Virus record (IMG/VR): IMGVR_UViG_3300021963_000021
Location: 1 to 64,000 of that record
Length of the DNA: 64,000 nucleotides
Direction: 5' to 3' (one strand)
The translations under genes were made by a program, and so were the position numbers. The notes below the pieces were generated by a model that worked only from the letters and a program-made list of their open reading frames with translations, was not told the DNA's origin and made no database searches. Every line of letters starts with the position of its first letter. Within the stretch, counting starts at the first letter, position 1. Positions 1,409 to 64,000 of the stretch are shown here, piece after piece.

Positions 1409-1417
1409 ACAAATTGG

Positions 1418-1446: not shown

Positions 1447-1476
1447 ATACGCATACTTAGACGTAAGGAGCGAACT

Positions 1477-1791: not shown

Positions 1792-1792
1792 T

Positions 1793-39905: not shown

Positions 39906-39912
39906 GAGTGGC

Positions 39913-40677: not shown

Positions 40678-40682
40678 GCTAG

Positions 40683-40703
40683 TATTTATTACAGCGGTAA
40701 ATA
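40683..40703. promoter_or_regulatory. back-to-back T4-type late promoters
   Basis: TATTTA (40683-40688, minus) and TAAATA (40698-40703, plus) between divergent neck genes. Confidence 0.75.
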
Positions 40704-40710
40704 TATGACT

Positions 40711-43864: not shown

Positions 43865-44118
43865 GTGTGTTGTCTATAAAAAATAATCCTCAATTTCAAA
43901 AGGATCTTGATCGATTCACAGAAGTTATAAATCAGCTTGATGGTGTCAAAAAGAATGAAGCTGAAAAACTGTTAAAAAGATTTATAGAGGCTATAAAAAG
44001 AATCGACGACACACTAGTAAATGTCAGTCTTGCTCCTGTTGATTATTCTTTTCACGTAGAAGCAAGAAGAGAACTAAAAAAGATTAGGCTCGATTTAGAA
44101 AATCTTTTACAGAAATAA
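43861..44118 (+). CDS. helical hypothetical protein
   Basis: 85-aa ATGA-coupled ORF. Confidence 0.65.
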   Translation: MSVLSIKNNPQFQKDLDRFTEVINQLDGVKKNEAEKLLKRFIEAIKRIDDTLVNVSLAPVDYSFHVEARRELKKIRLDLENLLQK

Positions 44119-44956: not shown

Positions 44957-45444
44957 CCCAGTGTCTGCTCCAACCAAGTCTTACAATTAGGCCAACTTCT
45001 GTAAATGTGTGCCCTACCACCAGCTCTAATCCATTCTTCGCAGTTACTATTGCGATCGTCAATTAAAATGTCACCTGGTTCTCTACAGTGCATGTATTTT
45101 TCGTAACTGTAAGGGCCAAGAAACACAGGTATGTGTGGAAAATGTTCTTGTGCCCAAAATACTTTATCCTGAGGTGCCCAGGGCATGTCGTTGCCTTTGG
45201 GAATAGCACTGAGAAAATAGAGACCGCAGCCTGTAATTGATTTATATGTTGTTACCCAATTGACTAATTCATATGCGCCTTCTTTGATTGGAAGTTTGCT
45301 GTACATACGCTGATCATCTTTGAGCCTACGCCAAGTTGAGTCAGGTAAAAGGTCACCGTCTTTAAACAAAGGTGCTTTTAGATAATCTCTAGCGTAGCCA
45401 TACCAATCAGCTACAACATCATCCATGTCTAGATATATGTTCAT
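44953..45444 (-). CDS. HAD-family phosphatase (5'(3')-nucleotidase-like)
   Basis: YLDMDDVVAD, DK..W, ILIDD..SN..EW..AGG. Confidence 0.8.
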   Translation of the reverse strand: MNIYLDMDDVVADWYGYARDYLKAPLFKDGDLLPDSTWRRLKDDQRMYSKLPIKEGAYELVNWVTTYKSITGCGLYFLSAIPKGNDMPWAPQDKVFWAQEHFPHIPVFLGPYSYEKYMHCREPGDILIDDRNSNCEEWIRAGGRAHIYRSWPNCKTWLEQTLG

Positions 45445-49900: not shown

Positions 49901-52900
49901 GTGTAAAGAAGCTGTCTGGTCTAGCATAGACTCTACCAGTAATAGTGCCAGCAATAGTACCCGATGCTCTGGCCTGATAGCTTAGAGCTGTTGCTGTTGG
50001 TATTGAAGTTGCTGTATATGATCCGCCGGCAAGTGTATGATTGTTAGAACCGTTGTCTGAAGATGGCACAACAATAAAGGCTCCGCCCGGTGGTATACCA
50101 TGCGCTGCTAAGAAATCTATACGTATCGTTGCCAACGCAGCATACGTCAATGTCGTTGATGAAGGCACAGCTCCTGTTGTGAATTCACTGACAGTGATTG
50201 CTGAATACAGCGAGAATGTAGTACCTGCTGAAGCAGTATGCGATCCTACAGTTATGTTAACAACTCCGCCTAGGGTAACATTTGAAACAGTTAGAACAAC
50301 ATCGTTAGTTGGACTTGCGCCACCAAGGGTAGCACCTGATAACTGTATCTTATTACCGATGTAATAATTAGTCCCGCCAGTTGCTGCTACTACAGAACTG
50401 TATGCGCTGCTAGATCTTGTTAGATTAAATGTTGCTCCGTTGCCTCTAGAAGCTGTGTTTGTTCCAGCCACTCCTGTGTAGGTAATTTGATAACTGGCAG
50501 TTCCAGAAACGCTAGCTTCTGTAATCGCGCCAGACTGGTTACTTGCTGCGCCTGTTACAGAGAAGTTTGTTATACCGCCAGTGACATTAGCTGCTGTCAC
50601 TGTGATTGTTAAATCGTTGGCTGTTGTTGAACCACCTAACTGTGTACCGTAGATCGTTAATGTATCTGCGGAATTATAACCAGATCCTGGGTTTGTTAGA
50701 GTCACAAAATATTCAGTGCCGTTCCTGATAACAGTAAATGTCGCTGCTGACCCAGTACCAGAAGTCAGGTCTTGAATAATGCTAGTGTAAGTAGCTGAAA
50801 CTTTAGATACTGTAATAGTAGCGTTATTTGACGGTGTTGATCCGTAGGTAAATGTTGTCCCAGGAACTGTAAACGATTCACCTGCTGAATAATTTGAACC
50901 GGCAGTGGTAACGTTAACTGTATAAGCGTTGCTGCGAGTTATTGAAAACACAGCACCTGTGCCTGCTGCCGAAGTTGTATAAACAGTGCTATCAATGCCA
51001 GTTACTGTTTGATTAGCAATGGCAAGAGCTGTTCCTTGGATCACTGTCACGGCTGAGATAGCACTGCCTGATAATGTTTCAACGTTTAGATACAGGTCGT
51101 TGGCTGTGGATGTTCCACCGAGATCTGTACCTAGTATTACGATAGTGTCACCAACAGCGTATCCGGATCCTCCGGCATTAACTGTTACTGTAGAATAGTT
51201 AGTAGTGTTATCTCGCAAGACATTAAATGTTGCGCTAGATCCTGTGCCTACAACGTTAGTACCTGCTATACCTAGATAGTTAACATTATTACCTTTGATG
51301 CTAGCAGTCAAAGGATCTGTAAACACTAATGTAAGGCCCTGTATATCCGAAATGAATATGTTATTACCTGATCCGTCGTTGACTGCTAGACCAATTTGTA
51401 CACCGACTGTGCTGGTCACATCAACTTGTGTAGTTCCAGAAGGATAATCGGCGGTCAATAAAGGTGTTGTCACAACACCTCCAGTACCAAGCACTGAAGT
51501 TATCTGTGAACCTACACCGAGATTCGTACCGGTTATAGGAGCACCAATTTCTGGTGCTGTGCCTGTGAACGCAAATCTATTAGAACCACTCGGTGCTGCT
51601 AATGATGTTGTCACTGTACCGCTAGTACCGTTGCTGATAACGGAAAATGTTGGTGTACCAATTTCAGCACCAGTATAAAAACCGCCTTGACGTACCTGTG
51701 AAAATGCTGTGGCCAATGCTGTGGGATTGCTCGATCCTACTCGTGCTTTGGCATAGTATGTAAATGATTTAGTAGTCGGTACTGAAGTAACAATAAATGA
51801 CCCCTCAGCACGTGAAACTCCACTGATAGCCTGAGTAAGACCTCTCACAGTAATAGGCTGACCAACAGCAAATCCGTGTACAGCGTTTGTCGTTACTGTA
51901 ATCAAACTGCCGCCGATGCCACTGGTGCCCACTGACGCATCTGAAACAATGCTAACTATATCTTGATCAGTACCCGGGACTTCATAGATACTTGGATATC
52001 CTCTCGCTACTGCGATAGCCTGCCACTTGGTTGGCTGTAAGCCGTATTCAAAGTCAGCGTCAAGCATGGCCTGCGGCGGAGCAACACGCATACGTTCAAT
52101 AGCATCTGTGCCAAAGTCGTATGGACGTACTGACATATCTTTGGTTTCTACAAATATCTGTATCTCATCATCTTCGGTCATTGAAGATGTGTCACAGTTT
52201 AATTTAATAGTCGTTACACCGTCAGTGGCCTGTAAGAATTTTACAAAGTCCTCGTCTTCAACAGTCTCTTGTGTAACGGTTCCGCCGATAGCAGGATTAG
52301 AGAAATTATAAATGATTACGTTTGCGGTCGTGTTTGTGATCAATAATAGATCATCACTACCAGCTTTACCTTGGAATTTAATTCTACCATAGGTGTTTGG
52401 AATTGCTGCTGCTAACAAGCTCAGACCGCCAGGAATAACAGTTAACACTATATTAGATAGTTCTACAATTCTCGCGGCAGCTCCTGCTTCTGGAGATCCA
52501 GTCAATACAACCTGAGGTGTAGATGTCTGGTATGGTACAGTTCTATATGAAGGATACGAAGGCAACGAACTAGTGCCAACCAACAATAGATTAATTAATA
52601 AATCCGATAACGCAGTGATTCGTGTTGTAGCACCTGTTTCAGCGAACGGAGATGTTCTAACCTGAGCATAGGTATTCTGGAATGACGGAGCAGCTATACC
52701 TGTTAAAATATAGTTGTTTATAGTGTTTCTTAAAAACGTATGAGCATAAGCTTCTGGATATCTATCGCCGTCAACTTGTGCTTCGTTTCCATAATAGTAT
52801 TTTGATACAACACGATATGTTTCTTCATTTCCATTGTATTGTAAGTCATAGATGTATGCGTCGATAACATAACCGGAATCTCTAATACACTTAGCACTGT

Positions 52901-54791
52901 CAAATGTATATCCTTGGAAATCTACCACGCTGTTAACTATAGTTGTCTTAGCCGATGCTATAGCTGTCTTAGCTGTTTGTAGTGCTGTGACAGCAAAAGT
53001 CACGCTAGGTACAGTTCTTGCTATTCCGCTTAGATATGAATTAGCCTGTGACTGTGTTGTACAGGCAACTACATCTTTGGTTATCTGTACCAGACCCTCT
53101 AATATTGTAGTTTCAGTATTGCTGGCGTTTGCGCCAGTTATTGTCTGAGACAGTGTATTTGGTGTAGACCCAGTGACTGTTTTTGTTATAGATATACCTT
53201 GAACAATTTGACCTATTATAGTTTTCAGTCTTCCGTAGGCATCTACAGTCTGTAATCTATGCGTTGGATCAATGCCCGGAGCTCCGTTAGCAAAACCATA
53301 GAAGAAGAATTTTGCTTGGTCATAGGTCGCAGCATTGCCACCATATAGAATATCATAACATAGCGCATCAATGGCATATTTGACATCTCGAGTACACTTA
53401 GCTTCGTCGTGATTATGTGTGGGATATGCGTCAGCTACCCAAGCATTGACTTCTGCTGCTATAAAGTTTTTGTTGGCAATCAGTTTGTCTTTGGCTGCGA
53501 TTTGATTTGCTGTGGCCGAACTTGGATTTGTGAACGTCACTGTATCAGCATTAGCTCTGCCGTTAGTAGCAATATCTCTAACTTCACTAAAGAAATTATT
53601 AGATCTTGTAACTGCTAGTGTACTTGCTGAAACACCGGCTAGTGCTGCTACTTCTAGTCCGGCTCTACGAATAGTATCTAACACGATAAAATCGTTGTCA
53701 AGAGCATTGTATTCTGCTAGTCCAAGGAACACAGCATTATAATTAGTGCCTAGGGCTATGTCGTATTGAACACCATCTATTAGATAACCAATATCTCGAA
53801 CACACTTGCTGGCTGTATCGATTTGATCTTGTATCCAAGCAGTGACTTCATATTGTAGATATTGTTTGTTAGCAGTTAACAAACGAACTGCTTCGTCGTA
53901 ATCTTCTGTGCCTACAATATTTTCAATGATATTGCTGTTAATTCTTTCTCGAACAAATCGATGTGCTTCAACTTCAGCTTGGCCGCTGCCGTCAACTTGT
54001 AGAGTATCTCCGTCGTAATAGACCTTAACAATATCCGTGATTGCTTCTGTACCGTCGTATCTTAAATCGTTTAGATACGCATCAAGTACAAATCCAAAAT
54101 CTCTTTCGCACTTGGCATTGCTGTAAGTGTAGTTTTCGTAGGTAGATGCTTTATATTGTATAGTCGGTAATGCGCTGAGTCCAGTGCTAATTACATCTTT
54201 GGTTATTTGTATTAATGTAGAAACTTTAGCAAATGATTGTACTTCAGCAGATGGTCCAGTTCTATACTGTGTGTAAGTTCCCTGATAAGAAGAAGCCGCA
54301 GTAGTTGTTAGGATGTTATTCTGTATGAGAGAATTTAAAAATGTGTAGGCCGCAACTTCTGGGGTTCTTGGTCCGTCAATTTGTGGACTAGATCCAATCC
54401 AGTAGTAGGTCGCTATTCTTCTAGTTTCTTCGTTACCGCCATATCGCAGATCATGGATATAGGCATTGATATTATTGGTTACGTCATTTAGACACTTTGT
54501 TGCGTCATAGGTATAACCGGAAAATGGTGCTATGCTGTTTGTTATCTGATACTGTATCCAAGCAACAACTTCATATTTCATATAGTTGATATTATTGGTC
54601 AGTAAGCGATAAGCTTCTGGATAGTAGTTAAACGCAGTATCAACAGTTATTCTTCTGTTGATGAATGCTGATAACTCTTTCTTTAGATGTTCTTTGTTAG
54701 CTGCTATGCTGGCATAGGCACTTGGAAACAAGTTATCAGTGTAACTTATTCCCGGTCTAAAAACGTAATTATTAATTTTTTTCTTTGCCAT
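46965..54791 (-). CDS. giant virion fibre/baseplate protein (2608 aa): N-terminal helical KCxRD repeats, Thr/Ser/Gly beta-repeats, lectin-like domain
   Basis: Five KCx(R/N)D repeats; about four GSGY..GD.I.I.GT.LGG repeats; RQSKKYIRYQSGK...YTWYGAG domain; lies among tail genes. Confidence 0.75.
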   Translation of the reverse strand: MAKKKINNYVFRPGISYTDNLFPSAYASIAANKEHLKKELSAFINRRITVDTAFNYYPEAYRLLTNNINYMKYEVVAWIQYQITNSIAPFSGYTYDATKCLNDVTNNINAYIHDLRYGGNEETRRIATYYWIGSSPQIDGPRTPEVAAYTFLNSLIQNNILTTTAASSYQGTYTQYRTGPSAEVQSFAKVSTLIQITKDVISTGLSALPTIQYKASTYENYTYSNAKCERDFGFVLDAYLNDLRYDGTEAITDIVKVYYDGDTLQVDGSGQAEVEAHRFVRERINSNIIENIVGTEDYDEAVRLLTANKQYLQYEVTAWIQDQIDTASKCVRDIGYLIDGVQYDIALGTNYNAVFLGLAEYNALDNDFIVLDTIRRAGLEVAALAGVSASTLAVTRSNNFFSEVRDIATNGRANADTVTFTNPSSATANQIAAKDKLIANKNFIAAEVNAWVADAYPTHNHDEAKCTRDVKYAIDALCYDILYGGNAATYDQAKFFFYGFANGAPGIDPTHRLQTVDAYGRLKTIIGQIVQGISITKTVTGSTPNTLSQTITGANASNTETTILEGLVQITKDVVACTTQSQANSYLSGIARTVPSVTFAVTALQTAKTAIASAKTTIVNSVVDFQGYTFDSAKCIRDSGYVIDAYIYDLQYNGNEETYRVVSKYYYGNEAQVDGDRYPEAYAHTFLRNTINNYILTGIAAPSFQNTYAQVRTSPFAETGATTRITALSDLLINLLLVGTSSLPSYPSYRTVPYQTSTPQVVLTGSPEAGAAARIVELSNIVLTVIPGGLSLLAAAIPNTYGRIKFQGKAGSDDLLLITNTTANVIIYNFSNPAIGGTVTQETVEDEDFVKFLQATDGVTTIKLNCDTSSMTEDDEIQIFVETKDMSVRPYDFGTDAIERMRVAPPQAMLDADFEYGLQPTKWQAIAVARGYPSIYEVPGTDQDIVSIVSDASVGTSGIGGSLITVTTNAVHGFAVGQPITVRGLTQAISGVSRAEGSFIVTSVPTTKSFTYYAKARVGSSNPTALATAFSQVRQGGFYTGAEIGTPTFSVISNGTSGTVTTSLAAPSGSNRFAFTGTAPEIGAPITGTNLGVGSQITSVLGTGGVVTTPLLTADYPSGTTQVDVTSTVGVQIGLAVNDGSGNNIFISDIQGLTLVFTDPLTASIKGNNVNYLGIAGTNVVGTGSSATFNVLRDNTTNYSTVTVNAGGSGYAVGDTIVILGTDLGGTSTANDLYLNVETLSGSAISAVTVIQGTALAIANQTVTGIDSTVYTTSAAGTGAVFSITRSNAYTVNVTTAGSNYSAGESFTVPGTTFTYGSTPSNNATITVSKVSATYTSIIQDLTSGTGSAATFTVIRNGTEYFVTLTNPGSGYNSADTLTIYGTQLGGSTTANDLTITVTAANVTGGITNFSVTGAASNQSGAITEASVSGTASYQITYTGVAGTNTASRGNGATFNLTRSSSAYSSVVAATGGTNYYIGNKIQLSGATLGGASPTNDVVLTVSNVTLGGVVNITVGSHTASAGTTFSLYSAITVSEFTTGAVPSSTTLTYAALATIRIDFLAAHGIPPGGAFIVVPSSDNGSNNHTLAGGSYTATSIPTATALSYQARASGTIAGTITGRVYARPDSFFTHRPFDGGVQLGTGGPQHGVQAIRQSKKYIRYQSGKGMMYTTGALFAPSYDIQNIVSDGVEVGSTITITLDENDHGFQAGAVVRITGVDTPGYDSGNEFYPGEDYTVDEIVSERVFRVKAVRRLGSKIPTLGFSCQVSTLNWKGAVVRAGAFDDQNGVFWEYNGTELAVVQRTATKQLAGTISILPGSNTITGSNSRFLDQVKAGDFVVVKGMTHVVTAVASNTSMTVNPDFRGVSAVSGTKICLVFDKRVPQSQFNRDRLDGTGPSGYDVDITKMQMIGIQYTWYGAGFIDFMLRGGDGNFVFAHRMRNSNVNSEAFMRTGNLPVRYEVANYGPAERLTADITALDTTIPIEDTQFYPDTGVVYVDNELISYSGKTATALTGATRAAQLTNYQSGALRSYRAGIATSHTSRTGVILLTNTTTPLISHWGSAFLTDGRFDEDRGYLFSYTSTGNSISTTKKTVFLIRLAPSVSNAVVGDLGERELLNRAQLLLKEISIASDAGTGGVVIEGVLNPQNYPTNPGDITWGKLNGLAQGGQPSFAQIAPGGSVNWAGGGSYTFTTATALGTVTGNATVPTGAAFNRSSGTTIAYVTRTSWDSIAAVVGQSVNDVKFPSGTTVSGKTDSPNPTATTLPLLQSTSVSAFTIGAPSNVLYFLQASWAALQGSTTATDIFTNDTSLFVDGTYVTAVTGPSGGFYTVSFSTSTLRQVNNNSTVSFRFAGTRAIGNTIHFFQQSSWAALPVDIIAGQTTNDAKFGGGTQISSVSTLRTFAGTSYYAVTFNAGNTAVVSASGTVTFNTTLYYTLSFSRASTSAISNTNNITFQLAQSTANTSTIYFTQASWESSGASANTEVATTETKFPAGTRVQSVSTLQTFSGTPYYTVTFTQTTNVVVTGGSTTVQFQFGLPPYALPGETIFSFITNPGSTDALNLGELKELTTTALGGRGTFPNGPDVLAINVYKVSGTATPANIILRWAEAQA

Positions 54792-54800
54792 TTTTCTCTC

Positions 54801-55352
54801 TTAGGCTCCAAACGCTACCGCAAAAGCGACAACGGAATTGTCTACATAATCTTTTCTTGCCGGATTGGCTGCTAATGTAGGAACAGGGATTAGCATACCA
54901 TCGACAAATGTCACTATACCACTTATATCTGCCCCAGACGCTGAAATTTCAGCGTTGTCAGCATTTAAACTTCCTGGGGAGACACCATTACTTACCACAT
55001 CTATTTGGTAGGCCGTGACCTGTCCTGGCGTTAGTGTACCAATATCTACATTATTAATAGTTCCTCTGGTCAAGCTGTTAATAACTACACGACCAGAAAC
55101 AACTGAAACTCTGTTTACCCCACTGCTTCTTAAATATACATCGCCATTAGTTTGTAACTGAGACAACACACCTATAGTTTCAAGGCTGCTGTTTTTAATT
55201 GTGTTGCTAAGGGCAGTTAAATCAGTTGAGAATGGATTGCCATAAGAACCTATGCTGAGAGTATTTGCGGTAAGATTACCGTTCTCATCAACATAGAACC
55301 CTGGACTTTTAAATCCAAAATCTGACTTTAATGTTTTTTGTCCTACAGTCAT
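54801..55352 (-). CDS. short fibre-like virion protein
   Basis: TINNVDIG, ARKDYVD motifs typical of fibre shafts; late box 55366-55371. Confidence 0.6.
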   Translation of the reverse strand: MTVGQKTLKSDFGFKSPGFYVDENGNLTANTLSIGSYGNPFSTDLTALSNTIKNSSLETIGVLSQLQTNGDVYLRSSGVNRVSVVSGRVVINSLTRGTINNVDIGTLTPGQVTAYQIDVVSNGVSPGSLNADNAEISASGADISGIVTFVDGMLIPVPTLAANPARKDYVDNSVVAFAVAFGA

Positions 55353-55368
55353 AGTTTATCCAGAGTAT

Positions 55369-56922
55369 TTATAGCCTGCCCACAACCACTTCTATAACGC
55401 CTTCGACGCCATCAAAGTTTTCTAGAGCCTTGCCGATTACGGTTCCGACTTTTGGGTCACTTGAAGGTCTAGCATATCCACCACCACTTGCGACCATCAT
55501 ATCACCTTTGTGGATTTTTCCTCGAACTTTACATGGCACACGCCCTTGTAATGCCAACGGAACTACATGTTTGCCTTCTAAATGACCATTCATTAAATGC
55601 GCAGGCTGTGTAGAAACAATGCCTGCTACACGTCTTGTTTCGTCTGATGCTACGGTTACTTCATAGTCTCCGCCAAATTCTAATACTGTTCCGGGTTCGT
55701 AGGCAGCATCTGCCAAATAATTTTCTGCCAAGTCCGCCCATTGTGCTTGTGTTGATGTAACTGTAAGAACATCAGTTGCTGTATTCAATGTCACTGTGCT
55801 CTTAGCATAAAGAGACTGCCCAGATACAGAGTCTGTTCCTGTAGAAAGCACCAACGGATATGAGCCAGTACTAACAGCCTGTACAATTACAGCCTGTGCT
55901 GTTCCGCCACTTCCGCCTCCACCACCAGAGGACGAAAAGGTTATAGTATCAGAAGCAGCATTGGTAGTAATAGTCATGCCTGTGCCTGCTACAAATGTCA
56001 ACGTGTCACTTGCTCTTTCAGCTATGACATTGGATTGTCCAGATACCGCAATAGTAGTAAAAGAATTACCAGAAGATACTGTTCCGCCACCTCCGCTGCT
56101 AGATCCGCTGCTGCCTGTGTTGGTAATAGTAATTGAATCCGTCAATGGATCTGTAATAATACTGATTCCAGTACCGGCAACTAGTGTAACTCTATCATTT
56201 GGTGTTTCGGCTACTACATCAGATTCGCCTGCTACAGATATTTTATTAAAATAGGTAAATGCCTGACCACCTATAGTCGAACCTGCGGGTACTTCTATGG
56301 CATTTGAACCTGTGCTAGATATTACTGCGCCATTTAGATTTAACACACCACCTAGGTATAAATTGTCCCAAGGTGCTGCTGCGGTCCCAAGATCGTGAAC
56401 AAATCCTAAATCTGGAATTATATCTCTGTCAACAGCGCCTAGATTTATAGTCGAACCACCTCCAGATATAGGAGGTCCACCTGGTGTTGGGTCAGGTACT
56501 AAAAAGGTAGGACTCTGAGGACGCTCAATGGCATTAAGAACTCCAGAGTAATGTGCTCTATATATGGCTTTCAGACCGTTGTAGTCAGCAATTTTTGGTG
56601 ATAGTTTCAGTGACAGATAACTGTCGTTGACTTCTACAGACACATCAACTAATTCGTCATCAATAGCTACACGACCAACAATAGAATAGTTGGCATAATC
56701 GGGTCTAGCTACAACTAGGACTTGAAGTGTTTCTTTTTTGTTAGAATTAAATTCTAAAGAAATTTGATAGCTAGCACTGGCAAAGTCGCCTACATACCAG
56801 CGATCAATTTCAGTAGAATCAAAGATTTGAATCCAGGGCCCTTTGTGGAGAAAATTGACCCCATTTTTAAACTGTAGGGTATTTTTTACATTAGGTATAA
56901 AATAATTGTTAAAATCGGTCAT
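55369..56922 (-). CDS. tail fibre protein with C-terminal chaperone/peptidase-like domain
   Basis: Duplicated IAVSGQS.V.A....DTLT.VAGTG repeat; ADLAENY...GRVPCKV...IGKALE C-terminus. Confidence 0.8.
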   Translation of the reverse strand: MTDFNNYFIPNVKNTLQFKNGVNFLHKGPWIQIFDSTEIDRWYVGDFASASYQISLEFNSNKKETLQVLVVARPDYANYSIVGRVAIDDELVDVSVEVNDSYLSLKLSPKIADYNGLKAIYRAHYSGVLNAIERPQSPTFLVPDPTPGGPPISGGGSTINLGAVDRDIIPDLGFVHDLGTAAAPWDNLYLGGVLNLNGAVISSTGSNAIEVPAGSTIGGQAFTYFNKISVAGESDVVAETPNDRVTLVAGTGISIITDPLTDSITITNTGSSGSSSGGGGTVSSGNSFTTIAVSGQSNVIAERASDTLTFVAGTGMTITTNAASDTITFSSSGGGGGSGGTAQAVIVQAVSTGSYPLVLSTGTDSVSGQSLYAKSTVTLNTATDVLTVTSTQAQWADLAENYLADAAYEPGTVLEFGGDYEVTVASDETRRVAGIVSTQPAHLMNGHLEGKHVVPLALQGRVPCKVRGKIHKGDMMVASGGGYARPSSDPKVGTVIGKALENFDGVEGVIEVVVGRL

Positions 56923-56994: not shown

Positions 56995-58821
56995 TTAGCT
57001 ATTTGCTATTTTTACCAACTTACCGTATTCTGGCAAGTATAGGTATTCAATATCGCTGCGTACTAGCGTATCTATAGCATCATCTAGTGTTTCTACTAGT
57101 GGGTCGCCACCTAAATTAAAGCTGGTGTTAAACAAGATAGGAATACCTGTTTCTTCTTTGAATGCTTTGATTAGATCATAGTAATGTTTGTTTTGCTCTT
57201 GTGTAACTGTCTGTATACGACAAGTGCCATCAACGTGAATAATACTTGGGATCTTTTCAGCAATACCGGGCTTACAATTTACAGCATACATCATGTGAGG
57301 GCTTGAACCCATTCCTCGCAGATCAAACCACTCATGAACATCGTCTTGTAGAATAGATCCTGCGAAGGGTCTAAAATACTCGCGACGTTTGACCATGTTT
57401 ACGAAGTCTTTTCCATCTTCAAAAGTTGGATCAAAAAGCACACTTCTGTTACCAAGTGCTCTAGGACCGTTCTCACTGCGTCCTTGGAAAATAGTAACAA
57501 TATTTTTTTCACGCAACAATTTAACAACATCTTTATGTGTAGCATCAGTCATTGTTCCGTCTGCAAACTTAACTTTTTCTTCTATTTCATCGACAGTGTA
57601 GATCTGTTCTGGGCCAAGATACAGCGTATCTAACTTGTGAACAGTCATGTTATCATCTAAAGCATGCCAGAACATCAAAGCAGCACCCATAGCAGTACCA
57701 GCATCATTGGAAATTGGTTCTACATAAATTTCGATGCCGTCTTTTTCTAAATGTTCTAGATAGAAATAATTGGCCACACAGTTTAGGCCGTAGCCGCCAC
57801 TGATAACTACACGCTTCTTGCCGCTCATTGCTGAGGCTTTACGAATCAAATTCAGTACCTGTTCCTGTGTCTGAGTTTGTACAGCATAGGCCAAGTCTCT
57901 TCTATTCTGTAGTGTAGTCACATCAGTTTTTTCATCTGTAGGATTTTCATCTAAGAATTCAAACATATCTGCGTTAACTGTAGAACTTGACGGATACATT
58001 GGTATGATCAAATTTCTATTTGACACAGGAAACTTTGCGTTAGATTCAAACAGCGGAGGAATCTTATCGTTAGGTTTACCATATGGAAATAGTCCCATAG
58101 TTTTTCCAGCTTCGATAGCTGAAAATCCACAGTACTCAGTTACACCTTCGTAGGTCTTAACAATGCCAGCACGGTCTGTTACCCATGCTTCGTGTGTTTC
58201 GCCCTGTTCACCAAATTGGTCAGAAGCTAACTTGTCATAATACTGCGCAGGAATACCTTCTCTAGTTCCATAGTGTTTATACAATGTTTTAAACTGTGAA
58301 GGATAGTTACAGTCAACAATAGATTCTACTTCATACGACCATATCTGTTGTCCGTTAAATGACAGTGGAATAAAAGTTCCTGCTCCGTCAACAATAAGTG
58401 CTACAGCATCTTCCCATCCTGAACGATAAAACGCACAGGCAGCATGTAGTTTGTGATGCATAAAGCTGAGATCAATAATCTGTGGGTGATTATAGATATT
58501 GGCTTTACGATCAATTAATCCCATCTTACGAGCTAGACCAGTATAGACATCGTCACCGGTATAGTCGACTCTGCCAGCTGTGTCGCCAAGTTTTTGTGTG
58601 TGAGCAATGATCAAATAATCTAACTTGTCTGTATATTCTAAAATTTTCATTATAGACGCATACGGACCGCCGTCATACTTGTGTCTTGTTAGTCGTTCTT
58701 CCTCAATAGAAAATACGATTTCACCATCTTTTAATAAGCAAACACCAGCATTATGGCCACGAGCTACGGCTGCGATCCAACCGCTTTTTAATCTTGGAGT
58801 TAAATCTTGTTGTTCGTTCAT
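56995..58821 (-). CDS. carbamoyltransferase (NodU/CmcH family), full length
   Basis: EEERLTR.K, HHKLHA, DGAG, GKTMGL, GPRALGNRS, KRREYFRPFA, HVDGT.R.Q, NTSFN. Confidence 0.93.
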   Translation of the reverse strand: MNEQQDLTPRLKSGWIAAVARGHNAGVCLLKDGEIVFSIEEERLTRHKYDGGPYASIMKILEYTDKLDYLIIAHTQKLGDTAGRVDYTGDDVYTGLARKMGLIDRKANIYNHPQIIDLSFMHHKLHAACAFYRSGWEDAVALIVDGAGTFIPLSFNGQQIWSYEVESIVDCNYPSQFKTLYKHYGTREGIPAQYYDKLASDQFGEQGETHEAWVTDRAGIVKTYEGVTEYCGFSAIEAGKTMGLFPYGKPNDKIPPLFESNAKFPVSNRNLIIPMYPSSSTVNADMFEFLDENPTDEKTDVTTLQNRRDLAYAVQTQTQEQVLNLIRKASAMSGKKRVVISGGYGLNCVANYFYLEHLEKDGIEIYVEPISNDAGTAMGAALMFWHALDDNMTVHKLDTLYLGPEQIYTVDEIEEKVKFADGTMTDATHKDVVKLLREKNIVTIFQGRSENGPRALGNRSVLFDPTFEDGKDFVNMVKRREYFRPFAGSILQDDVHEWFDLRGMGSSPHMMYAVNCKPGIAEKIPSIIHVDGTCRIQTVTQEQNKHYYDLIKAFKEETGIPILFNTSFNLGGDPLVETLDDAIDTLVRSDIEYLYLPEYGKLVKIANS

Positions 58822-59762
58822 TTCTTATGTTTTCCTAAAACAGCATCAACGACATAATCTATAATTTCAGGCGTCATTGACATTAGATTTTCATGCTTTC
58901 TATCTATACGTTCGTCCATTGTAATACGTATAGGGCTGTATTCACGCAGTTCTTCGCCCATGTCTAATACATTAAAGTTTTTGGCATTAGGATATGAAAC
59001 GTTTATAGGATAGGTAGAACCAAATACCACAGTTGATGGCTTATCCATTGCGTAGGCCAAGTGCTGGCCTAGACTATCACAACCTAAGAAATGATCTGCG
59101 TATTTGATTACAGCAGCCCATTGACGTATACTGATATTTTCAGGGAACGCAATTTCATCTTTGATAGTTTTTTCTTGAGTTAGGTCTAGTTTTATTTCGC
59201 TCATCATTATTACAGCAAATCCTTTTTCCTGTAACTTCTGTATGATTTTCTTAACATCTTTGTATTCAATACTGCGAGCAGTTCTGTCTACAAACGATTC
59301 GTCGAGATATTCTATGCCTCTACCAAACGGCTGGAATACAATTACTTTTTCTTTTTTTAATTTCTTTTTAACTTCAGCAATTAGTTGACGACCGGCAATT
59401 AATTCATCCTTGCTGAGTCTCAACGTAGGTCTTGGTAATTCTCTAATACCCTGCTTGTTTAATTCGATATCAATGGCTTGGCTAATACTACATTTTTGAT
59501 TGTAATATTCCCAGACACGATACGGTTCAATTGTGTAGATATCTTTGTCTTTGAGTTTCTCTACGAACAGATTCTTGTGCCAAACGTCATAGGTTCTAGC
59601 ATCAAGGGTGGGGTGTCCTTTAAACACATCTGTGCCACCTTCGCAAACGATAATAAAATCTTTATCTCCGGACTCTTGTTCGTACTTTTCAAAAGCAGGT
59701 ACTGAACAAAGCATACGGCCTGCGCCGCCATTAATAAAGAATGCTTTAGAGCGTTTTTCCAT
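58818..59762 (-). CDS. GT9-like (ADP-heptose-type) glycosyltransferase
   Basis: GGAGR, VFQPFG, IKYADHFLGCDSLGQHLA, STVVFGST. Confidence 0.7.
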   Translation of the reverse strand: MEKRSKAFFINGGAGRMLCSVPAFEKYEQESGDKDFIIVCEGGTDVFKGHPTLDARTYDVWHKNLFVEKLKDKDIYTIEPYRVWEYYNQKCSISQAIDIELNKQGIRELPRPTLRLSKDELIAGRQLIAEVKKKLKKEKVIVFQPFGRGIEYLDESFVDRTARSIEYKDVKKIIQKLQEKGFAVIMMSEIKLDLTQEKTIKDEIAFPENISIRQWAAVIKYADHFLGCDSLGQHLAYAMDKPSTVVFGSTYPINVSYPNAKNFNVLDMGEELREYSPIRITMDERIDRKHENLMSMTPEIIDYVVDAVLGKHKK

Positions 59763-59840: not shown

Positions 59841-60485
59841 TTAATAGAAAGTTGGTAAGTCGCTTGGGAAAGGAATCTTCCAGTGATCTACATCAGCATA
59901 TGTAGTTTCAAGGTTTTGTAGCCATTCTAAATGGTCTTCCATTTTTTGAATGTCTTCAGCGGAATACATCATTTCTGCTGCGTGTGCCAATGATCTTTCT
60001 ACAGACTCAATTAGACTTGGGATTGAAGCTAAGAAACTTGCTCTTGAGTTTGCGTGTTCACGGAATCTCGGTCCAACAAATGCTCCGTTGATATATTTCA
60101 TATCGTTAGTCCAACGACATTGACCTAGCGCACCCTGTTTCTGATCATAATGGTATGTGTATGTTCCACCAGGTACTTCTTCTTCATACGTTGGAATTTC
60201 TTCTACATACTCGTACTGATTAGTTAGGTACGCACATTGATATGTGTATTCGTCTGCGTCAATTTTGTAAAAAGTAGTTGCTGGATCGTCATCAACTAAA
60301 TCTTCAAAATTTAAATCCGCCTCAGTTTCGGCTCGTCTAGCGATGTATTTTATCTCGCCAGTTGCGTCAATAACGCAAATAGCAAGGTATCTTGAACCGG
60401 TATAAACAGCATTCACTGTGTTATTGTTAACAGTGGTAGTCTTATATGGCTCATCTGGTAGTAAAAAAGTAAATGCTTTTCTCAT
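59841..60485 (-). CDS. putative tail fibre assembly/chaperone protein
   Basis: Acidic; C-terminal W...L...WKIPFP resembling Tfa-like ends; follows the Cys-rich genes. Confidence 0.5.
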   Translation of the reverse strand: MRKAFTFLLPDEPYKTTTVNNNTVNAVYTGSRYLAICVIDATGEIKYIARRAETEADLNFEDLVDDDPATTFYKIDADEYTYQCAYLTNQYEYVEEIPTYEEEVPGGTYTYHYDQKQGALGQCRWTNDMKYINGAFVGPRFREHANSRASFLASIPSLIESVERSLAHAAEMMYSAEDIQKMEDHLEWLQNLETTYADVDHWKIPFPSDLPTFY

Positions 60486-60507: not shown

Positions 60508-61470
60508 TCAAAAGAATCTAATGCGTACAGCACCATGACCGCCACGTCCTGCGTGATCTCTATGGTCTGGACAAGGTCTCGGTGCCCACCCACCAATTCC
60601 CGGTGGAATGTAAGGAGTACAGCCCTGCATTTCATAACAGCCACATGCTCGGTCTGAACGCCAGCAGTAACTCATTGGAATTCCTACCTGCGGACTTCTT
60701 GACATAGCAGCCACAGCATTCATGGACTGCATTTTTCCTTGACCGTTCATACCGTTTGAGTGTCTGTTATCGTCCTCGGTTTGCCAAGAAGCAGCACCAC
60801 CGTTACAGCCGTATAATCCAGGAGGCGCAGCGACCCAATACTGGAAGCAACAGGTACATGTTGGTTGACATCCGTTAAACGATGTACAACTAAATGCGCC
60901 ACAGCAGTTAACATCGCCGCCAAATCCGCAGGCAATCCAAATACCTGAGAAGTAATTACAGATCAAACCGCAGTTATCATTATATGGTCCACGAGCACAA
61001 TAGCCGTTAGCAGCAAAACAGCAGAACAAAGAAGTACCTGTTGAGCAGAAAGAACGGCCGCCTGCCCCACCTTGGGCGCACATACAGCCGTTAGCACCAG
61101 CGGCTCCTTGCCAACATAGGGCAGTTGAATCTGAACATCCTCGGAAACAGATAGCATCTGCGTTACCGCAGCTCATTCCAACACCGCCGCAGATAGTTTT
61201 ACCTGCGCAAACTGATATTGTTCTCTTAGAATACGCACCAGCATTACCTGGCAATCCGCCACCGCAGCAGCACATACGAGCACCACTACCACCGGCACCC
61301 CATATTTCTATGACTGCTGTGCCTGTGCCTGGTGCTATCCAGCAAAATCCTGTACATAAGTTAGTGTAAAAAGTAGATGGCGTATAGACCCAGATTCTAC
61401 CCTGTTGGATATTGTCTTCTTCTCTACCTATTGATCGCTGTCTAACCAGCATTTGTAATGATGACGGCAT
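60508..61470 (-). CDS. Gly/Cys-rich virion protein, paralog A
   Basis: EIWGAGGSG...GGHGAVRIRF glycine-rich domain; about 33 Cys in 320 aa. Confidence 0.75.
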   Translation of the reverse strand: MPSSLQMLVRQRSIGREEDNIQQGRIWVYTPSTFYTNLCTGFCWIAPGTGTAVIEIWGAGGSGARMCCCGGGLPGNAGAYSKRTISVCAGKTICGGVGMSCGNADAICFRGCSDSTALCWQGAAGANGCMCAQGGAGGRSFCSTGTSLFCCFAANGYCARGPYNDNCGLICNYFSGIWIACGFGGDVNCCGAFSCTSFNGCQPTCTCCFQYWVAAPPGLYGCNGGAASWQTEDDNRHSNGMNGQGKMQSMNAVAAMSRSPQVGIPMSYCWRSDRACGCYEMQGCTPYIPPGIGGWAPRPCPDHRDHAGRGGHGAVRIRFF

Positions 61471-63283
61471 TGTTTTCTCTCTGTTATTCTAAGAAATTAT
61501 TTCTTGTACCTGCTGCCACGAATCTAATACGCACAGCACCATGACCTCCGCGACCACCCACGTCACGAACATCTGGGCAACCTCTTCCAGCATAACCAGG
61601 AAATCCTGGTGGCATATAAGGTATACAGCCGTTGGATTCTTGACATCCGCATGAACGGCCACCTGTCCAACAGTTGTTATTCATGAATCCCATGCTTGGA
61701 CTCTTGCTGGCGATTCCAAGTCCGGGAAATATTCCGTTAAGTCCTGTTCCTGACCAGTTTTCTGAAGCGTTATCTGCGTCCATTGTGTAGGTAATAACTG
61801 CGCCGCCAGTGCCAAACTTGCCAGGTGGTGTTGCTACGTGATATTGTGTAGCACACGGACATTGTGGTAAGCAACCAAAGAAACTAGTACAGCTAAATCC
61901 ACCAAAACAGTTGATGTCGCCACCGTAGGCCTGAGCACAGCAACCGCCTGTGCCTGGACCATAGTTACAGATAATTCCGCAGCCTGTGCCACCTAATTGT
62001 GTACCGCAGAAGCTGCCTGCTATAAAGCAGCAATAAGGAGCAGTACCTGTAGTACAATAACTTGTACCACCGCGGCCACCTTGAGCACACATACAACCGT
62101 TAGTTGTACTGCTAAACCAACAGGCCTGTGTAGGATCCGAACAACCACGGAAACATAATCCGTCTGTGTTACCGCAGCTAAATCCCACTGTTCCACAGAT
62201 TTTACAGCCAGTGGCCACGGCGAAAGAACGTTTAGCATAAGCGCCAGGATTACCCGGAAGTCCAGCGCCGCAGCAGCACATACGAGCACCACTACCACCA
62301 GCACCCCATAATTCTAATGTTACACAACCTGCGCTAGGCGCTGTCCAGCAAAATCCTGTACAGAAATTTGTTCTTACGTTACCTGGGCTCCATGCCCAAA
62401 CACGACCTTGTTCGAGGTTTTCCTCTTCATCTGCGATGAAGTTTAATTTTGTTCTTATTAATCCTCTAAAACTTGTAGGCATCTTAGAATCCCTCGATAA
62501 ATTTAATTCTGATCATACCGTGTCCGCCTCGGCGTCCTTGATCTCTAACACCTGGACACGGAGCTCCTGCTGATCCTGGATGTCCTGGAGGTATATGTCC
62601 AGAACAACCTTCGTTTTCATAACAGCCGCAACCACCACCGAAGCCCCAGTTATATGCGAACGGAATACCTGAGTTTGGTTTTTTACTTGCTGCTGACAGC
62701 GCAGAAACGTGTTGGTGTGCGCCTTGACCGGACCAGTTTGAGAATTCGTTACCATCTTCTGTGGTAAACACAGCAACACCACCGCATTTAGCATATTGTC
62801 CCGGTGGAATGGCTACATGATAGTGGAAGGAACATGGACATTGTGGTAAGCACCCAGCAAATAGCGTACAGCTAAAACCACCGCAGCGATTAACGTCACC
62901 GCCAAAACCACAGCCAATCCAAGCACCGCCGAAGTAGTTACAGATCAAACCACAGTTATCGTTGTATGGACCACTGAAACAGAACCCTTGGTTGACAAAG
63001 CAACAGAACAAGGATGTGCCTGTAGAACACATCTGTCTACCGCCCAAACCACCTTGAGCACACATACAACCGCTTGCTCCGCAGTTTCCGTACCAATATA
63101 ACCCTGAGGCATCCGAACAGCCTTTAAAACATAGTCCTTCGTTACCACAGGCATAACCCACTGAACCGCAGATAAAGCAACCTGCGTTCATTCTTATTGT
63201 TTTCTTAGCATAGCCGCCTGCGTTACCTGGCAATCCGCCACCGCAGCAGCACATACGAGCACCACTACCACCAGCACCCCATA
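61244..63283. repeat. identical DNA blocks shared by the three Cys-rich paralogs
   Basis: 50 bp identical at 61244-61293 and 63223-63272; 43 bp identical at 62268-62310 and 63241-63283. Confidence 0.8.
61484..62482 (-). CDS. Gly/Cys-rich virion protein, paralog B
   Basis: Same framework incl. ARMCCCG. Confidence 0.75.
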   Translation of the reverse strand: MPTSFRGLIRTKLNFIADEEENLEQGRVWAWSPGNVRTNFCTGFCWTAPSAGCVTLELWGAGGSGARMCCCGAGLPGNPGAYAKRSFAVATGCKICGTVGFSCGNTDGLCFRGCSDPTQACWFSSTTNGCMCAQGGRGGTSYCTTGTAPYCCFIAGSFCGTQLGGTGCGIICNYGPGTGGCCAQAYGGDINCFGGFSCTSFFGCLPQCPCATQYHVATPPGKFGTGGAVITYTMDADNASENWSGTGLNGIFPGLGIASKSPSMGFMNNNCWTGGRSCGCQESNGCIPYMPPGFPGYAGRGCPDVRDVGGRGGHGAVRIRFVAAGTRNNFLE

Positions 63284-63458
63284 GCTCAATCACAGCAGTA
63301 CCGCAGGTAGGGGCAATCCAGCACATGGTAAACTGTGAAAAGTCGTTGCCTGGTGTATAAACCCAAACTCTTCCTCTTTCTAAATTTTCTTCAGCGCCTG
63401 CTGAGGTATAGAAAGAGTTAGTCTTGGTTCCTATCAGGCTTTTAAATGATGTTGGCAT
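62484..63458 (-). CDS. Gly/Cys-rich virion protein, paralog C
   Basis: Same framework incl. ARMCCCG. Confidence 0.75.
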   Translation of the reverse strand: MPTSFKSLIGTKTNSFYTSAGAEENLERGRVWVYTPGNDFSQFTMCWIAPTCGTAVIELWGAGGSGARMCCCGGGLPGNAGGYAKKTIRMNAGCFICGSVGYACGNEGLCFKGCSDASGLYWYGNCGASGCMCAQGGLGGRQMCSTGTSLFCCFVNQGFCFSGPYNDNCGLICNYFGGAWIGCGFGGDVNRCGGFSCTLFAGCLPQCPCSFHYHVAIPPGQYAKCGGVAVFTTEDGNEFSNWSGQGAHQHVSALSAASKKPNSGIPFAYNWGFGGGCGCYENEGCSGHIPPGHPGSAGAPCPGVRDQGRRGGHGMIRIKFIEGF

Positions 63459-63500
63459 ATTGTTCTCGCTTCCTGTAAGTTGTGAATATCGCTCGCATCA

Positions 63501-63833
63501 TTAAGCCGATGATACAATCCATCCGTAGTTTGATCCTGTGTACACTAGTGTGATAATAGATCCGTTAATGTCTATTGTTAGATCGTCAGCAATATTCTGT
63601 ATCTTAGCACCATTTCTAGCAACAGTGATGTTGTTAGTAGCTGCTGATGCGCCAATATCAATGATCTGAATAGTGTCATTCAAAAACAGTGTGTTTGATG
63701 CCGGCAGCGTTATGGTAAATGCTGTGCTTGAAGAATTTGCTAAAATTCTGTCGTTTACTGAAGCGTTGAAGGTATTACTAACTTCACGTATAGTAGTACC
63801 TGCTGTTCCAGTTGTTGTGATATATCTTCCCAT
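63501..63833 (-). CDS. small tail-fibre-repeat domain protein
   Basis: FTITLPA...D.IQIID...NNITVARNG.KI...LVY...GW (T4 gp34-like repeat); late box 63851-63856. Confidence 0.75.
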   Translation of the reverse strand: MGRYITTTGTAGTTIREVSNTFNASVNDRILANSSSTAFTITLPASNTLFLNDTIQIIDIGASAATNNITVARNGAKIQNIADDLTIDINGSIITLVYTGSNYGWIVSSA

Positions 63834-63858
63834 TTAAGTCCCCTATGGAATATTTATT

Positions 63859-63999
63859 TTATAACGTAGATGTTTCAAGTCCGAACGCTACGGCACTTAT
63901 GTTTGCTTGGTTACTGTAAACCACCAAAACTTTGCCTGCGTCCATGACTATACCAGTTCTTTCAAGCACACCTTTACCTAAAAGTTCTGTGTCGTATTC
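63859..63999 (-). CDS. partial virion protein (3' end)
   Basis: Open frame EYDTELLGKGVLERTGIVMDAGKVLVVYS...FGLETSTL to TAA at 63859. Confidence 0.65.
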   Translation of the reverse strand, partial: EYDTELLGKGVLERTGIVMDAGKVLVVYSNQANISAVAFGLETSTL

Positions 64000-64000
64000 T

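What the first reader, a model, noticed from the sequence alone, without database searches (positions are those of the whole stretch)
60508..63458. Three tandem Gly/Cys-rich (~10% Cys) virion paralogs: possible metal-cluster fibre tip
Seen: three 320-332 aa paralogs with the WGAGG.G...GG.G.(V/I)RI.F glycine-rich framework, about 33 Cys counted in paralog A, including CCC, CMC, CC, CxC and CxxxC motifs at conserved positions. They sit between fibre-repeat genes and a putative chaperone. Established: the bacterial cytoplasm disfavours disulfides, and Gly/Cys-rich proteins of some giant viruses (GciS) bind Fe-S clusters. Inference: a heterotrimeric or three-way alternative receptor-binding tip loaded with Fe/S or Zn, or cross-linked after lysis. 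An iron-bearing tip could exploit host iron uptake.
Basis: partly seen in the sequence, partly recalled or inferred. Interest (0 to 1): 0.72.

Follow-up and report, generated by a model that had tools for sequence, protein, structure and literature searches.

The report
Cysteine-packed tail-fibre tip proteins, in triplicate
Three neighbouring genes of a 364-kb aquatic jumbo phage encode tail-fibre head proteins of a known glycine-rich fold that carry about 30 cysteines each (22 of them invariant), an undescribed variant whose sulfur chemistry, disulfide staples or bound metal, is still open.

Summary
Three tandem minus-strand genes (320, 332 and 324 aa) encode proteins with 33, 32 and 30 Cys and 17-20% Gly. 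They are the three most Cys-rich of 404 ORFs in a 363,943-bp phage genome.

They are real genes under purifying selection. The family is found almost only in viruses, and every member is Cys-rich.

An AlphaFold2 model matches the TNF-like plus glycine-rich ("TG") fibre head of cyanophage Pam3 gp24 (Z 15.8). It also matches a Bxb1 tail-tip protein (Z 12.6) and the ALK/LTK ectodomain (Z about 10).

The genes sit in a fixed cassette: two small fibre-like proteins, three Cys-rich heads, a 214-aa partner, a GT9-like glycosyltransferase and a carbamoyltransferase. This cassette recurs in 55 viral contigs. It also occurs, with 2-3 Cys-rich copies, in the T4-like cyanophages P-SSM2 and S-CAM1.

The three copies are ancient ortholog groups.

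The fibre-tip reading is therefore well supported. The metal-cluster reading is neither shown nor excluded:
- CxxC motifs are the scarcest short spacing and no His is conserved, which argues against canonical metal sites.
- Cys-count parity is random and cysteines change singly, which argues against a closed all-disulfide design.
- No link to GciS was tested.
- Heterotrimer versus three separate heads is unresolved.

It is a new variant of a known kind.

The parts
60508..61470 (-). Cys-rich TG-domain fibre-head paralog A (third in the cassette; 320 aa, 33 Cys)
   Evidence: ORF; Cys count; AF2 model with pLDDT 68.7 and pTM 0.73; Pam3 gp24 Z 15.8, Bxb1 tail tip Z 12.6, ALK Z 9.7-10.4; ortholog clade support 0.96
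61484..62482 (-). Cys-rich TG-domain fibre-head paralog B (second in the cassette; 332 aa, 32 Cys)
   Evidence: ORF; 53% identical to A; ortholog clade support 0.71; dN/dS 0.09-0.29
62484..63458 (-). Cys-rich TG-domain fibre-head paralog C (first in the cassette; 324 aa, 30 Cys)
   Evidence: ORF; 59-61% identical to A; ortholog clade support 0.98
63501..63833 (-). p110, a small protein resembling a segment of tail-fibre proteins; always directly upstream of the trio
   Evidence: PHROG hits to tail and tail-fibre families, best E 3e-16; conserved position in the 55 cassette loci
63859..64000 (-). p106 (runs on to 64179 in the genome), a small fibre-like protein and first gene of the cassette
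   Evidence: phrog_11338 'tail fiber protein' E 1.2e-9; conserved position; homologue in P-SSM2 and S-CAM1 at the same place
59841..60485 (-). p214, a conserved partner directly downstream of the trio; candidate assembly chaperone (inferred only)
   Evidence: phrog_9740, unknown function; present in every full cassette and in P-SSM2 and S-CAM1; AF2 pLDDT 94, N-terminal beta domain plus C-terminal helical hairpin; no PDB match above Z 6.4
58818..59762 (-). GT9-like (heptosyltransferase family) glycosyltransferase, part of the conserved cassette
   Evidence: Pfam PF01075 E 2.7e-8; phrog_8954 E 1e-136; synteny
56995..58821 (-). NodU/CmcH-type carbamoyltransferase, part of the conserved cassette
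   Evidence: Pfam Carbam_trans_C E 1e-57 and Carbam_trans_N E 1e-26; phrog_1601; synteny
46965..56922 (-). Downstream fibre and virion proteins (2608, 183 and 517 aa) that frame the cassette
   Evidence: phrog_5838 'virion structural protein' E 2.5e-240 and short-tail-fibre hits; tail-fibre C-terminal hits for the 517-aa protein

Best explanation
The three genes encode distal head proteins of the phage's tail fibres. Each chain has a short conserved N-terminal helix, probably the docking element. The rest is a TNF-like beta-sandwich interwoven with a lattice of extended glycine-rich strands. This is the 'TG' fold of cyanophage Pam3 fibre gp24, of a Bxb1 tail-tip protein and of the ALK/LTK ectodomain. 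The proteins are presumably made with the fibre genes, probably folded with help from the conserved downstream p214, and mounted at fibre ends where they meet the host surface. The three copies are ancient, separately conserved ortholog groups, so they give three distinct heads. I lean towards three separate heads on different fibres (about 0.5) over one A:B:C heterotrimer (about 0.35). The special feature is a set of 22 invariant and about 10 variable cysteines that flank the glycine motifs and brace the lattice. My preferred chemistry (about 0.45) is that the thiols stay reduced during cytoplasmic assembly and oxidise to a dense but not fully closed disulfide network once virions reach oxic water, leaving some free thiols. 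A metal-thiolate cluster is the main rival (about 0.3). Shown: the genes, their conservation, the fold class, the cassette and the paralogy. Inferred: virion location, docking, the chaperone role and the sulfur chemistry.
For: Fold: VIA-align gives Z 15.8 to Pam3 gp24 (190 residues, 3.0 A), 12.6 to Bxb1 tail-tip chain Qa and 7.3-10.4 to 12 ALK/LTK entries, then drops to 4.2. Foldseek ranks the same proteins first. In BFVD, 153 viral matches reach E<=0.001, led by S-CAM3 and P-SSM2 proteins and many 'glycine-rich domain-containing' and tail-fibre proteins. ESM-Atlas features give PF21722 clusters for 84 of 100 hits. [quoted passage not shown] Context: the genes lie in a fibre cluster spanning about 47-95 kb of the genome, in a cassette fixed in 55 loci and shared with P-SSM2 and S-CAM1 next to their 'tail fiber protein' genes, with hhalign probability 99% and E 5e-18. 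Paralogy: the three cassette positions form clades with support 0.98, 0.71 and 0.96. In a sister lineage one copy sits directly upstream of a 1400-1700 aa fibre gene and two others lie 22 kb away. Cysteines: 22 columns are at least 95% Cys, and every family member has 5.6-12.3% Cys. Pointers to disulfides: an even invariant set, extracellular-type CC/CxC/CxxxC spacings with few CxxC, no conserved His, two variable Cys pairs that co-occur with phi 0.84 and 0.81, and mass-spectrometry-verified disulfides in Pam3 fibres (PMC9942802).
Against: There are no virion proteomics for any member, so virion location rests on fold and context. The model is of medium confidence (pLDDT 68.7), and several Cys-rich loops (146-158, 260-285) fall below 50. 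Pfam PF21722 does not match at sequence level. Against the disulfide lean: assembly takes place in a reducing cytoplasm; total Cys parity is random (76 even, 78 odd); close relatives differ by one Cys four times as often as by two; in the cyanophage branch only about a third of the cysteines fall in shared columns; and no sulfhydryl oxidase or thioredoxin was found in the genome, although the oxidase control was silent. Cys-Cys distances could not be read from the model.
Confidence: 0.6

Rival explanations
1. The invariant cysteines ligate a multinuclear metal-thiolate cluster (metallothionein-like Zn, Cu or Cd, or an Fe-S cluster) that holds the glycine lattice together, loaded in the host cytoplasm.
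For: Cytoplasmic proteins with 10% Cys are usually metal binders (general knowledge). Cys number shows no even bias and changes singly. Cys richness persists while positions drift in the cyanophage branch. CC and CxC spacings are also typical of metallothionein clusters (own knowledge). The Cys-rich loops are the low-confidence parts of the model. There is precedent for metals in virion proteins: GciS Fe-S (PMC12499515) and His-bound Fe in the T4 gp37 tip (own knowledge).
Against: There is no hit to any Zn, Fe-S or metallothionein family. CxxC is the rarest short spacing, at 1.1 per protein against 4.0 CC and 3.7 CxC. No conserved His, and no conserved acidic residue was examined near the Cys motifs. 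The protein is aromatic-rich and beta-structured, unlike metallothioneins. No Fe-S assembly gene was looked for or found.
Confidence: 0.3
2. The three paralogs form one obligate A:B:C heterotrimeric head, as the three C1q chains do, rather than three separate heads.
For: All three ortholog groups are kept in fixed order in every full cassette. The split sister lineage also has exactly three copies. S-CAM1 has three. TNF-like heads commonly trimerise, Pam3 gp24 is a trimer, and C1q heads are heterotrimers of tandem paralogs (own knowledge).
Against: P-SSM2 has only two copies. In the sister lineage one copy has moved next to a single fibre gene, away from the other two. The long N-terminal helical bundle that drives Pam3 gp24 trimerisation is missing here, with only a helix at residues 3-11. 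The complex prediction gave no answer.
Confidence: 0.35
3. The proteins are not virion parts. They would act inside or on the infected cell, for example as acceptors or scaffolds for the neighbouring GT9 and carbamoyltransferase enzymes, or as thiol or metal buffers.
For: There are no proteomic data. The tight linkage to sugar-modifying enzymes is conserved across two phage lineages. In P-SSM2 the region runs on into heptose-synthesis genes.
Against: The best structural matches are all fibre or tail-tip heads or their ALK homologues. The genes are embedded among fibre genes and preceded by fibre-like adaptor proteins. No signal peptide or membrane segment was noticed by eye in the translated sequences; none was searched for with a tool.
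Confidence: 0.07

Closest known systems
Cyanophage Pam3 tail fibre gp24 (PDB 7YPX, 7YFW)
   Same: TNF-like sandwich plus glycine-rich lattice, Z 15.8 over 190 residues. Similar size. It is a fibre head with a dedicated downstream helper gene (PMC9608196).
   Different: About 20% identity and no sequence-level hit. gp24 has a long N-terminal helical bundle and, as far as the papers say, a single functionally noted Cys (Cys28). Here there is only a 9-residue helix and 30-33 Cys. p214 shows no structural match to chaperone gp25.
Mycobacteriophage Bxb1 tail-tip protein (PDB 9D93, chains Qa/Qb)
   Same: Same TG fold, Z 12.6 over 186 residues. A virion tail-tip component.
   Different: It comes from a siphovirus of a Gram-positive-type host and is not Cys-rich as far as known. 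The gene product was not identified here.
ALK/LTK extracellular TG (TNF-like/glycine-rich) domain
   Same: Same fold class, Z 7.3-10.4 for 12 entries. An extracellular ligand-binding module.
   Different: An animal receptor kinase ectodomain. The relation is structural only.
Viral 'glycine-rich domain' proteins (Pfam PF21722 Gly_rich_2)
   Same: The WGAGG...GG.G..RI.F framework. BFVD and ESM-Atlas neighbours carry this family.
   Different: The Pfam model does not match, at E<=0.1 in hmmscan and E<=10 in the genome search. Canonical members were not examined for Cys.
Cys-rich homologues in T4-like cyanophages (PSSM2_304 and 306; S-CAM1 SXBG_00224 to 00226; S-CAM3; P-SSM5)
   Same: Homologous (hhalign 99%, E 5e-18), with 8-12% Cys, the same cassette and the same CCC after the first glycine motif.
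   Different: Only 12 columns hold Cys in at least 4 of the 5 cyanophage proteins (6 in all 5). Copy number is 2-3, and duplications within each cyanophage are independent. All are annotated 'hypothetical'.
GciS, the Gly/Cys-rich Fe-S protein of Megavirinae
   Same: A Gly- and Cys-rich virion protein of a large virus.
   Different: GciS is a low-molecular-weight protein and the most abundant one in the particle (PMC12499515). Here the proteins are 320-aa fibre heads with a defined TG fold. No sequence comparison could be made.
T-even gp38 adhesins (S16 gp38) and the T4 gp37 iron-bearing tip
   Same: Fibre-tip receptor binders built on glycine-rich extended strands (gp38), or carrying metal ions on the fibre axis (gp37; own knowledge).
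   Different: gp38 did not appear among the structural matches. The gp37 metals are His-ligated, and no His is conserved here.

Membership tests
TG-fold phage fibre heads (Pam3 gp24 type) | TNF-like beta-sandwich interwoven with a lattice of glycine-rich extended strands | tested here: met
   AF2 model against PDB: Z 15.8 (Pam3), 12.6 (Bxb1), 7.3-10.4 (ALK/LTK), and 4.2 for the next unrelated entry. The evidence is at model level only (pLDDT 68.7).
TG-fold phage fibre heads (Pam3 gp24 type) | Several glycine-rich motifs (GGxGG type) spread along the chain | tested here: met
   About 9-10 Gly-rich motifs are read directly in the sequence. G58, G60, G61, G70, G75, G78, G134, G135, G137, G138, G184, G185, G310, G311 and G313 are invariant.
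TG-fold phage fibre heads (Pam3 gp24 type) | Trimeric assembly through an N-terminal helical bundle | tested here: inconclusive
   Only a short helix (residues 3-11) is predicted. The complex job gave no answer.
TG-fold phage fibre heads (Pam3 gp24 type) | Presence in the virion at fibre ends | not testable with these tools
   No proteome or structure exists for any phage carrying the family. Context in a fibre cluster is the only support.
Pfam PF21722 Gly_rich_2 | Match to the family HMM above its cut-off | tested here: not met
   No Pfam hit at E<=0.1, and PF21722 does not match in the genome at E<=10. Only fold and language-model likeness link them.
T-even gp38 adhesins | Structural match to S16 gp38 (three-layer glycine-strand sandwich with hypervariable loops) | tested here: not met
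   gp38 is absent from the Foldseek and VIA-align lists. There is no sharply hypervariable segment within ortholog groups.
Canonical Zn-finger or Fe-S proteins | CxxC/CxxH-type ligand motifs or a match to a known metal-binding family | tested here: not met
   No Pfam or NCBIfam hit. CxxC occurs 1.1 times per protein against 4.0 for CC and 3.7 for CxC. No conserved His.
GciS (Megavirinae Gly/Cys-rich Fe-S proteins) | Small size, sequence homology and bound [2Fe-2S] or linear [3Fe-4S] clusters | not tested
   No GciS sequence was at hand in the tools. Size and fold differ from its published description. Metal content cannot be tested here.
Disulfide-rich extracellular domains | Even Cys number, and Cys gained and lost in pairs | tested here: inconclusive
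   22 invariant Cys (an even number) and two co-occurring variable pairs, but total parity is 76 even to 78 odd, and Cys count differs by 1 in 16 close pairs against by 2 in 4.
Tail-fibre assembly chaperones (Pam3 gp25 / Mu Tfa type), for p214 | Structural match to a known fibre chaperone | tested here: not met
   The p214 model has pLDDT 94, but its best PDB Z is 6.4, on the helical hairpin only. Only the gross layout (beta domain plus helical C-terminus) and the gene position are alike.

The most novel reading that the evidence does not exclude
The roughly 22 invariant cysteines of these fibre heads ligate a multinuclear metal-thiolate or Fe-S cluster embedded in the glycine lattice. That would be a new kind of metallo-adhesin, carried by widespread aquatic jumbo phages and some cyanophages, and the first Cys-ligated metal cluster in a phage receptor-binding protein.
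Probability: 0.3. Interest if true: 0.85.

Novelty: new variant of a known kind. Interest (0 to 1): 0.55.

Why it matters
Fibre heads decide which cells a phage can infect. This family is widespread: more than 500 clusters at 90% identity in public metagenomes, and near-identical DNA of this phage in marine, estuarine, riverine and freshwater runs. It is also present in cultured cyanophages (P-SSM2, S-CAM1), so it can be studied at the bench.

A glycine-strand lattice braced by 22 invariant cysteines is an unusual protein design. If the cysteines form disulfides, it would show how a phage builds a redox-matured, very stable adhesin in a reducing cell. If they bind metal, it would be a new virion metalloprotein with a bearing on trace-metal budgets.

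The fixed link to a GT9-like transferase and a carbamoyltransferase also raises the testable idea that these 'LPS genes' of cyanophages modify the fibre tip rather than the host.

Tried and rejected
- **Complex prediction of A+B+C:** no answer. ESMFold2 could not fold the chains (pLDDT 42), so this is evidence neither way.
- **megablast and tblastn against GenBank phages at E 1e-5:** no match. Weak hits appeared only at E<=1, probably because of the low-complexity filter.
- **Pfam, NCBIfam and PDB sequence searches:** nothing usable.
- **PF21722 HMM on the genome:** no match.
- **Erv1/ALR oxidase search:** the control was silent, so the result is uninformative. No thioredoxin was found, one glutaredoxin was, and no psbA was, so there is no host clue.
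- **p214 fold searches:** no convincing match.
- **First attempt to fold p214:** It was repeated without them.
- **Pairwise Cys co-variation on the wide family alignment:** weak (maximum phi 0.45), on an alignment with many gaps.
- **Literature searches:** no description of this Cys-rich family. The 'moraphage' paper concerns another lineage.
- **Genome-contig scan:** a single hit, a 15-kb contig in an archaeal MAG, probably mis-binned.
- **Metatranscriptome contigs:** they cover the genes, but DNA carry-over cannot be excluded, so expression is not shown.
- **tRNA and Rfam scans of the window:** empty.
- **One mistyped PHROG call:** failed.
Full report
**What is there**

Three back-to-back minus-strand ORFs lie at 60508-61470, 61484-62482 and 62484-63458, encoding proteins of 320, 332 and 324 aa.
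- They hold 33, 32 and 30 cysteines (9.3-10.3%) and 17-20% glycine, and are 53-61% identical to each other.
- CCC, CxC, CC and CxxxC motifs sit at aligned positions. The frame is WGAGGSG near residue 57 and GGHG-x-(V/I)RI-x-F at the end.
- The window is the first 64 kb of a 363,943-bp virus record that CheckV rates complete.
- Of 404 ORFs I called in that genome, these three are the most Cys-rich. The median is 1.0% and the 95th percentile 3.9%.

**They are real, selected genes of a virus-restricted family**
- A word-indexed search found 522 clusters at E<=0.001, all unnamed or 'hypothetical', from Tara, ENA, JGI and Logan assemblies.
- A profile search of 1.84 billion representatives found only 208 proteins. 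Every full-length one has 5.6-12.3% Cys.
- Among one genome for each of 185,579 prokaryote species there is a single hit, on a 15-kb contig of an archaeal MAG that is probably mis-binned.
- dN/dS against orthologues is 0.08-0.29.
- Within each ortholog group, Cys is the most conserved residue class. In 145 jumbo-phage members, 22 columns are at least 95% Cys.
- The phage's terminase is about 52% identical to those of PA5oct, Atu_ph07 and Phosso. Its host is unknown, and it has no psbA.
- Near-identical DNA is found in marine, estuarine, riverine and freshwater runs.

**Fold**

Pfam, NCBIfam and PDB sequence searches give nothing. PHROGs gives only phrog_4205, of unknown function.

An AlphaFold2 model of paralog A built on 26 homologues has pLDDT 68.7 and pTM 0.73.
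- Aligned to 48,161 PDB representatives without Foldseek, it gives Z 15.8 to the cyanophage Pam3 fibre gp24 (190 residues, 3.0 A), Z 12.6 to a Bxb1 tail-tip chain and Z 9.7 to ALK.
- A second look lists 15 entries at Z 7.3-15.8: two Pam3, one Bxb1 and twelve ALK/LTK. The next entry scores 4.2. Foldseek agrees.
- Against predicted viral structures, 153 matches reach E<=0.001. They are led by S-CAM3 and P-SSM2 proteins, followed by 'glycine-rich domain-containing', tail-fibre and minor-tail proteins.
- ESM-Atlas features point to PF21722 Gly_rich_2 clusters, although that HMM itself does not match.

Pam3 gp24 is a trimeric fibre. It has an N-terminal helical bundle that docks to the baseplate, and TNF-like plus glycine-rich domains proposed to recognise the host. 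It is folded by a chaperone encoded next to it (PMC9608196; PMC9942802). So these proteins have the fold of a fibre head. S16 gp38 did not appear among the matches.

**Context**

On the coding strand the order is: fibre proteins of 1600-2100 aa (beyond the window), p106, p110, C, B, A, p214, a GT9-like glycosyltransferase, a NodU/CmcH carbamoyltransferase, then fibre or virion proteins of 517, 183 and 2608 aa.
- p106 and p110 match pieces of tail-fibre families.
- Of 80 related IMG/VR loci, 55 show the same block, sometimes with a second p214 or a second GT9. Tara contigs show it too.
- The T4-like cyanophages P-SSM2 and S-CAM1 carry the same block after a 'tail fiber protein' gene: two small proteins, then two (P-SSM2) or three (S-CAM1) proteins with 8-12% Cys, then a protein of about 230 aa, a GT9-like protein and a 'Nol-like carbamoyltransferase'.
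- Profile-profile comparison confirms homology (probability 99%, E 5e-18).
[quoted passage not shown] 'Chaperone' remains an inference from gene position and gross layout.

**Three copies**
- In a tree of 150 members, each cassette position is a clade (support 0.98, 0.71 and 0.96) once one aberrant phage is set aside. The triplication is therefore old, and every copy has been kept.
- A sister lineage also has three copies but splits them. One, sister to position 3 (support 0.93), lies directly upstream of a 1400-1700 aa fibre gene. Two adjacent ones lie 22 kb away.
- P-SSM2 has two copies.
- Constant co-retention fits a C1q-like heterotrimer. The split arrangement, the two-copy phage and the missing long trimerisation helix fit three separate heads better.
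- The only complex job gave no answer.

**The cysteines**

Against canonical metal sites:
- CxxC is the rarest short spacing, at 1.1 per protein against 4.0 for CC, 3.7 for CxC and 3.0 for CxxxC.
- No His is conserved, and no metal-binding family matches.

Against a closed all-disulfide design:
- Total Cys number is even in 76 and odd in 78 of 154 non-redundant members, and even in 68 and odd in 77 of the jumbo-phage set.
- Among 58 independent close pairs, the count differs by one in 16 and by two in 4.
- In the cyanophage branch only about a third of the cysteines fall in columns shared by at least 4 of 5 proteins, although richness is kept.
- Assembly takes place in the cytoplasm. No thioredoxin was found, and the oxidase search was uninformative.

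For disulfides:
- The invariant set is even (22).
- Two variable pairs co-occur strongly (phi 0.84 and 0.81), though each may be a single clade.
- Pam3 fibres carry disulfides verified by mass spectrometry.

Reading the sequence against the predicted strands (an inference), the cysteines flank the glycine motifs both where they leave the sandwich and at their far turns. An example is the CCC right after the first motif.

I could not read model coordinates, so no distances are available.

**Most likely mechanism**

These are fibre-head proteins that contact the host surface, and the cysteines are structural braces of the glycine lattice. I give about 0.8 to the fibre-head role.

| Question | Option | Probability |
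|---|---|---|
| Brace chemistry | Disulfides that form after release, with some free thiols | about 0.45 |
| Brace chemistry | Metal-thiolate cluster | about 0.3 |
| Brace chemistry | Mixed or other | remainder |
| Arrangement | Three separate heads | about 0.5 |
| Arrangement | One heterotrimer | about 0.35 |

**Novelty**

The TG fold in phage fibres is known (Pam3, 2022-23). Genes of this family have sat in GenBank as 'hypothetical' since P-SSM2 was sequenced. I found no paper describing the Cys-rich subfamily or its cassette. It is a new variant of a known kind and a good target for structure and metal analysis, because cultured cyanophages carry it.

**Reach of the evidence**

Virion location, docking, the chaperone role, oligomer state, sulfur chemistry and any sugar modification are all inferred. 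Metatranscriptomic libraries hold contigs covering the genes, but DNA carry-over is not excluded.

Noticed in passing
window 56995-59762 (-); L009 6924-11297; L010 6550-9778: A GT9-like (heptosyltransferase family) protein and a NodU-type carbamoyltransferase are fixed to the Cys-rich head genes in jumbo phages and in P-SSM2 and S-CAM1. In the cyanophages ADP-heptose synthesis genes follow. These 'LPS genes' may modify the fibre tip (heptose plus carbamoyl) rather than the host; this was not tested.
   Followed up: partly
G001:C1:39581-41493 and 62909-63850; G002:C1:16624-17565 and 39362-41276; L064 7998-8954: In a sister phage lineage the three family copies are split: one sits directly upstream of a 1400-1700 aa fibre gene and two adjacent ones lie about 22 kb away.
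   Followed up: partly
window 59841-60485 (-): p214 gives a very confident AF2 model (pLDDT 94), with a beta domain plus a helical hairpin, and has no match in the PDB above Z 6.4. It may be a new fold for a fibre-associated helper.
   Followed up: partly
window 4003-4689 (+): A Bax inhibitor-1/YccA family membrane protein (Pfam PF01027, E 2e-49) is encoded by the phage, with a 2OG-Fe(II) oxygenase beside it at 2768-3307 (-).
   Followed up: no
window 35420-38800 (-): An unusually long tail sheath protein (1126 aa; phrog_10581, E 4.5e-210).
   Followed up: no
window 60508-63458: Near-identical DNA occurs in marine, estuarine, riverine and freshwater metagenomes and in three metatranscriptomic libraries. 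That is a broad salinity range for one phage lineage.
   Followed up: partly
L092 1264-2223: The only hit among 185,579 species genomes is on a 15-kb contig of a marine archaeal MAG (PAOW01000006.1), most likely a phage contig binned by mistake.
   Followed up: no
window 1-2000: GC content is 51% against about 40% for the rest of the window. No tRNA or Rfam family is found there, and the small ORF at 939-1286 has 6% Cys.
   Followed up: no
window 44084-44977 (-): A nucleotide-sugar epimerase (phrog_540, E 1.5e-53) lies just downstream of the fibre cluster, adding to the sugar-modification genes around the fibres.
   Followed up: no
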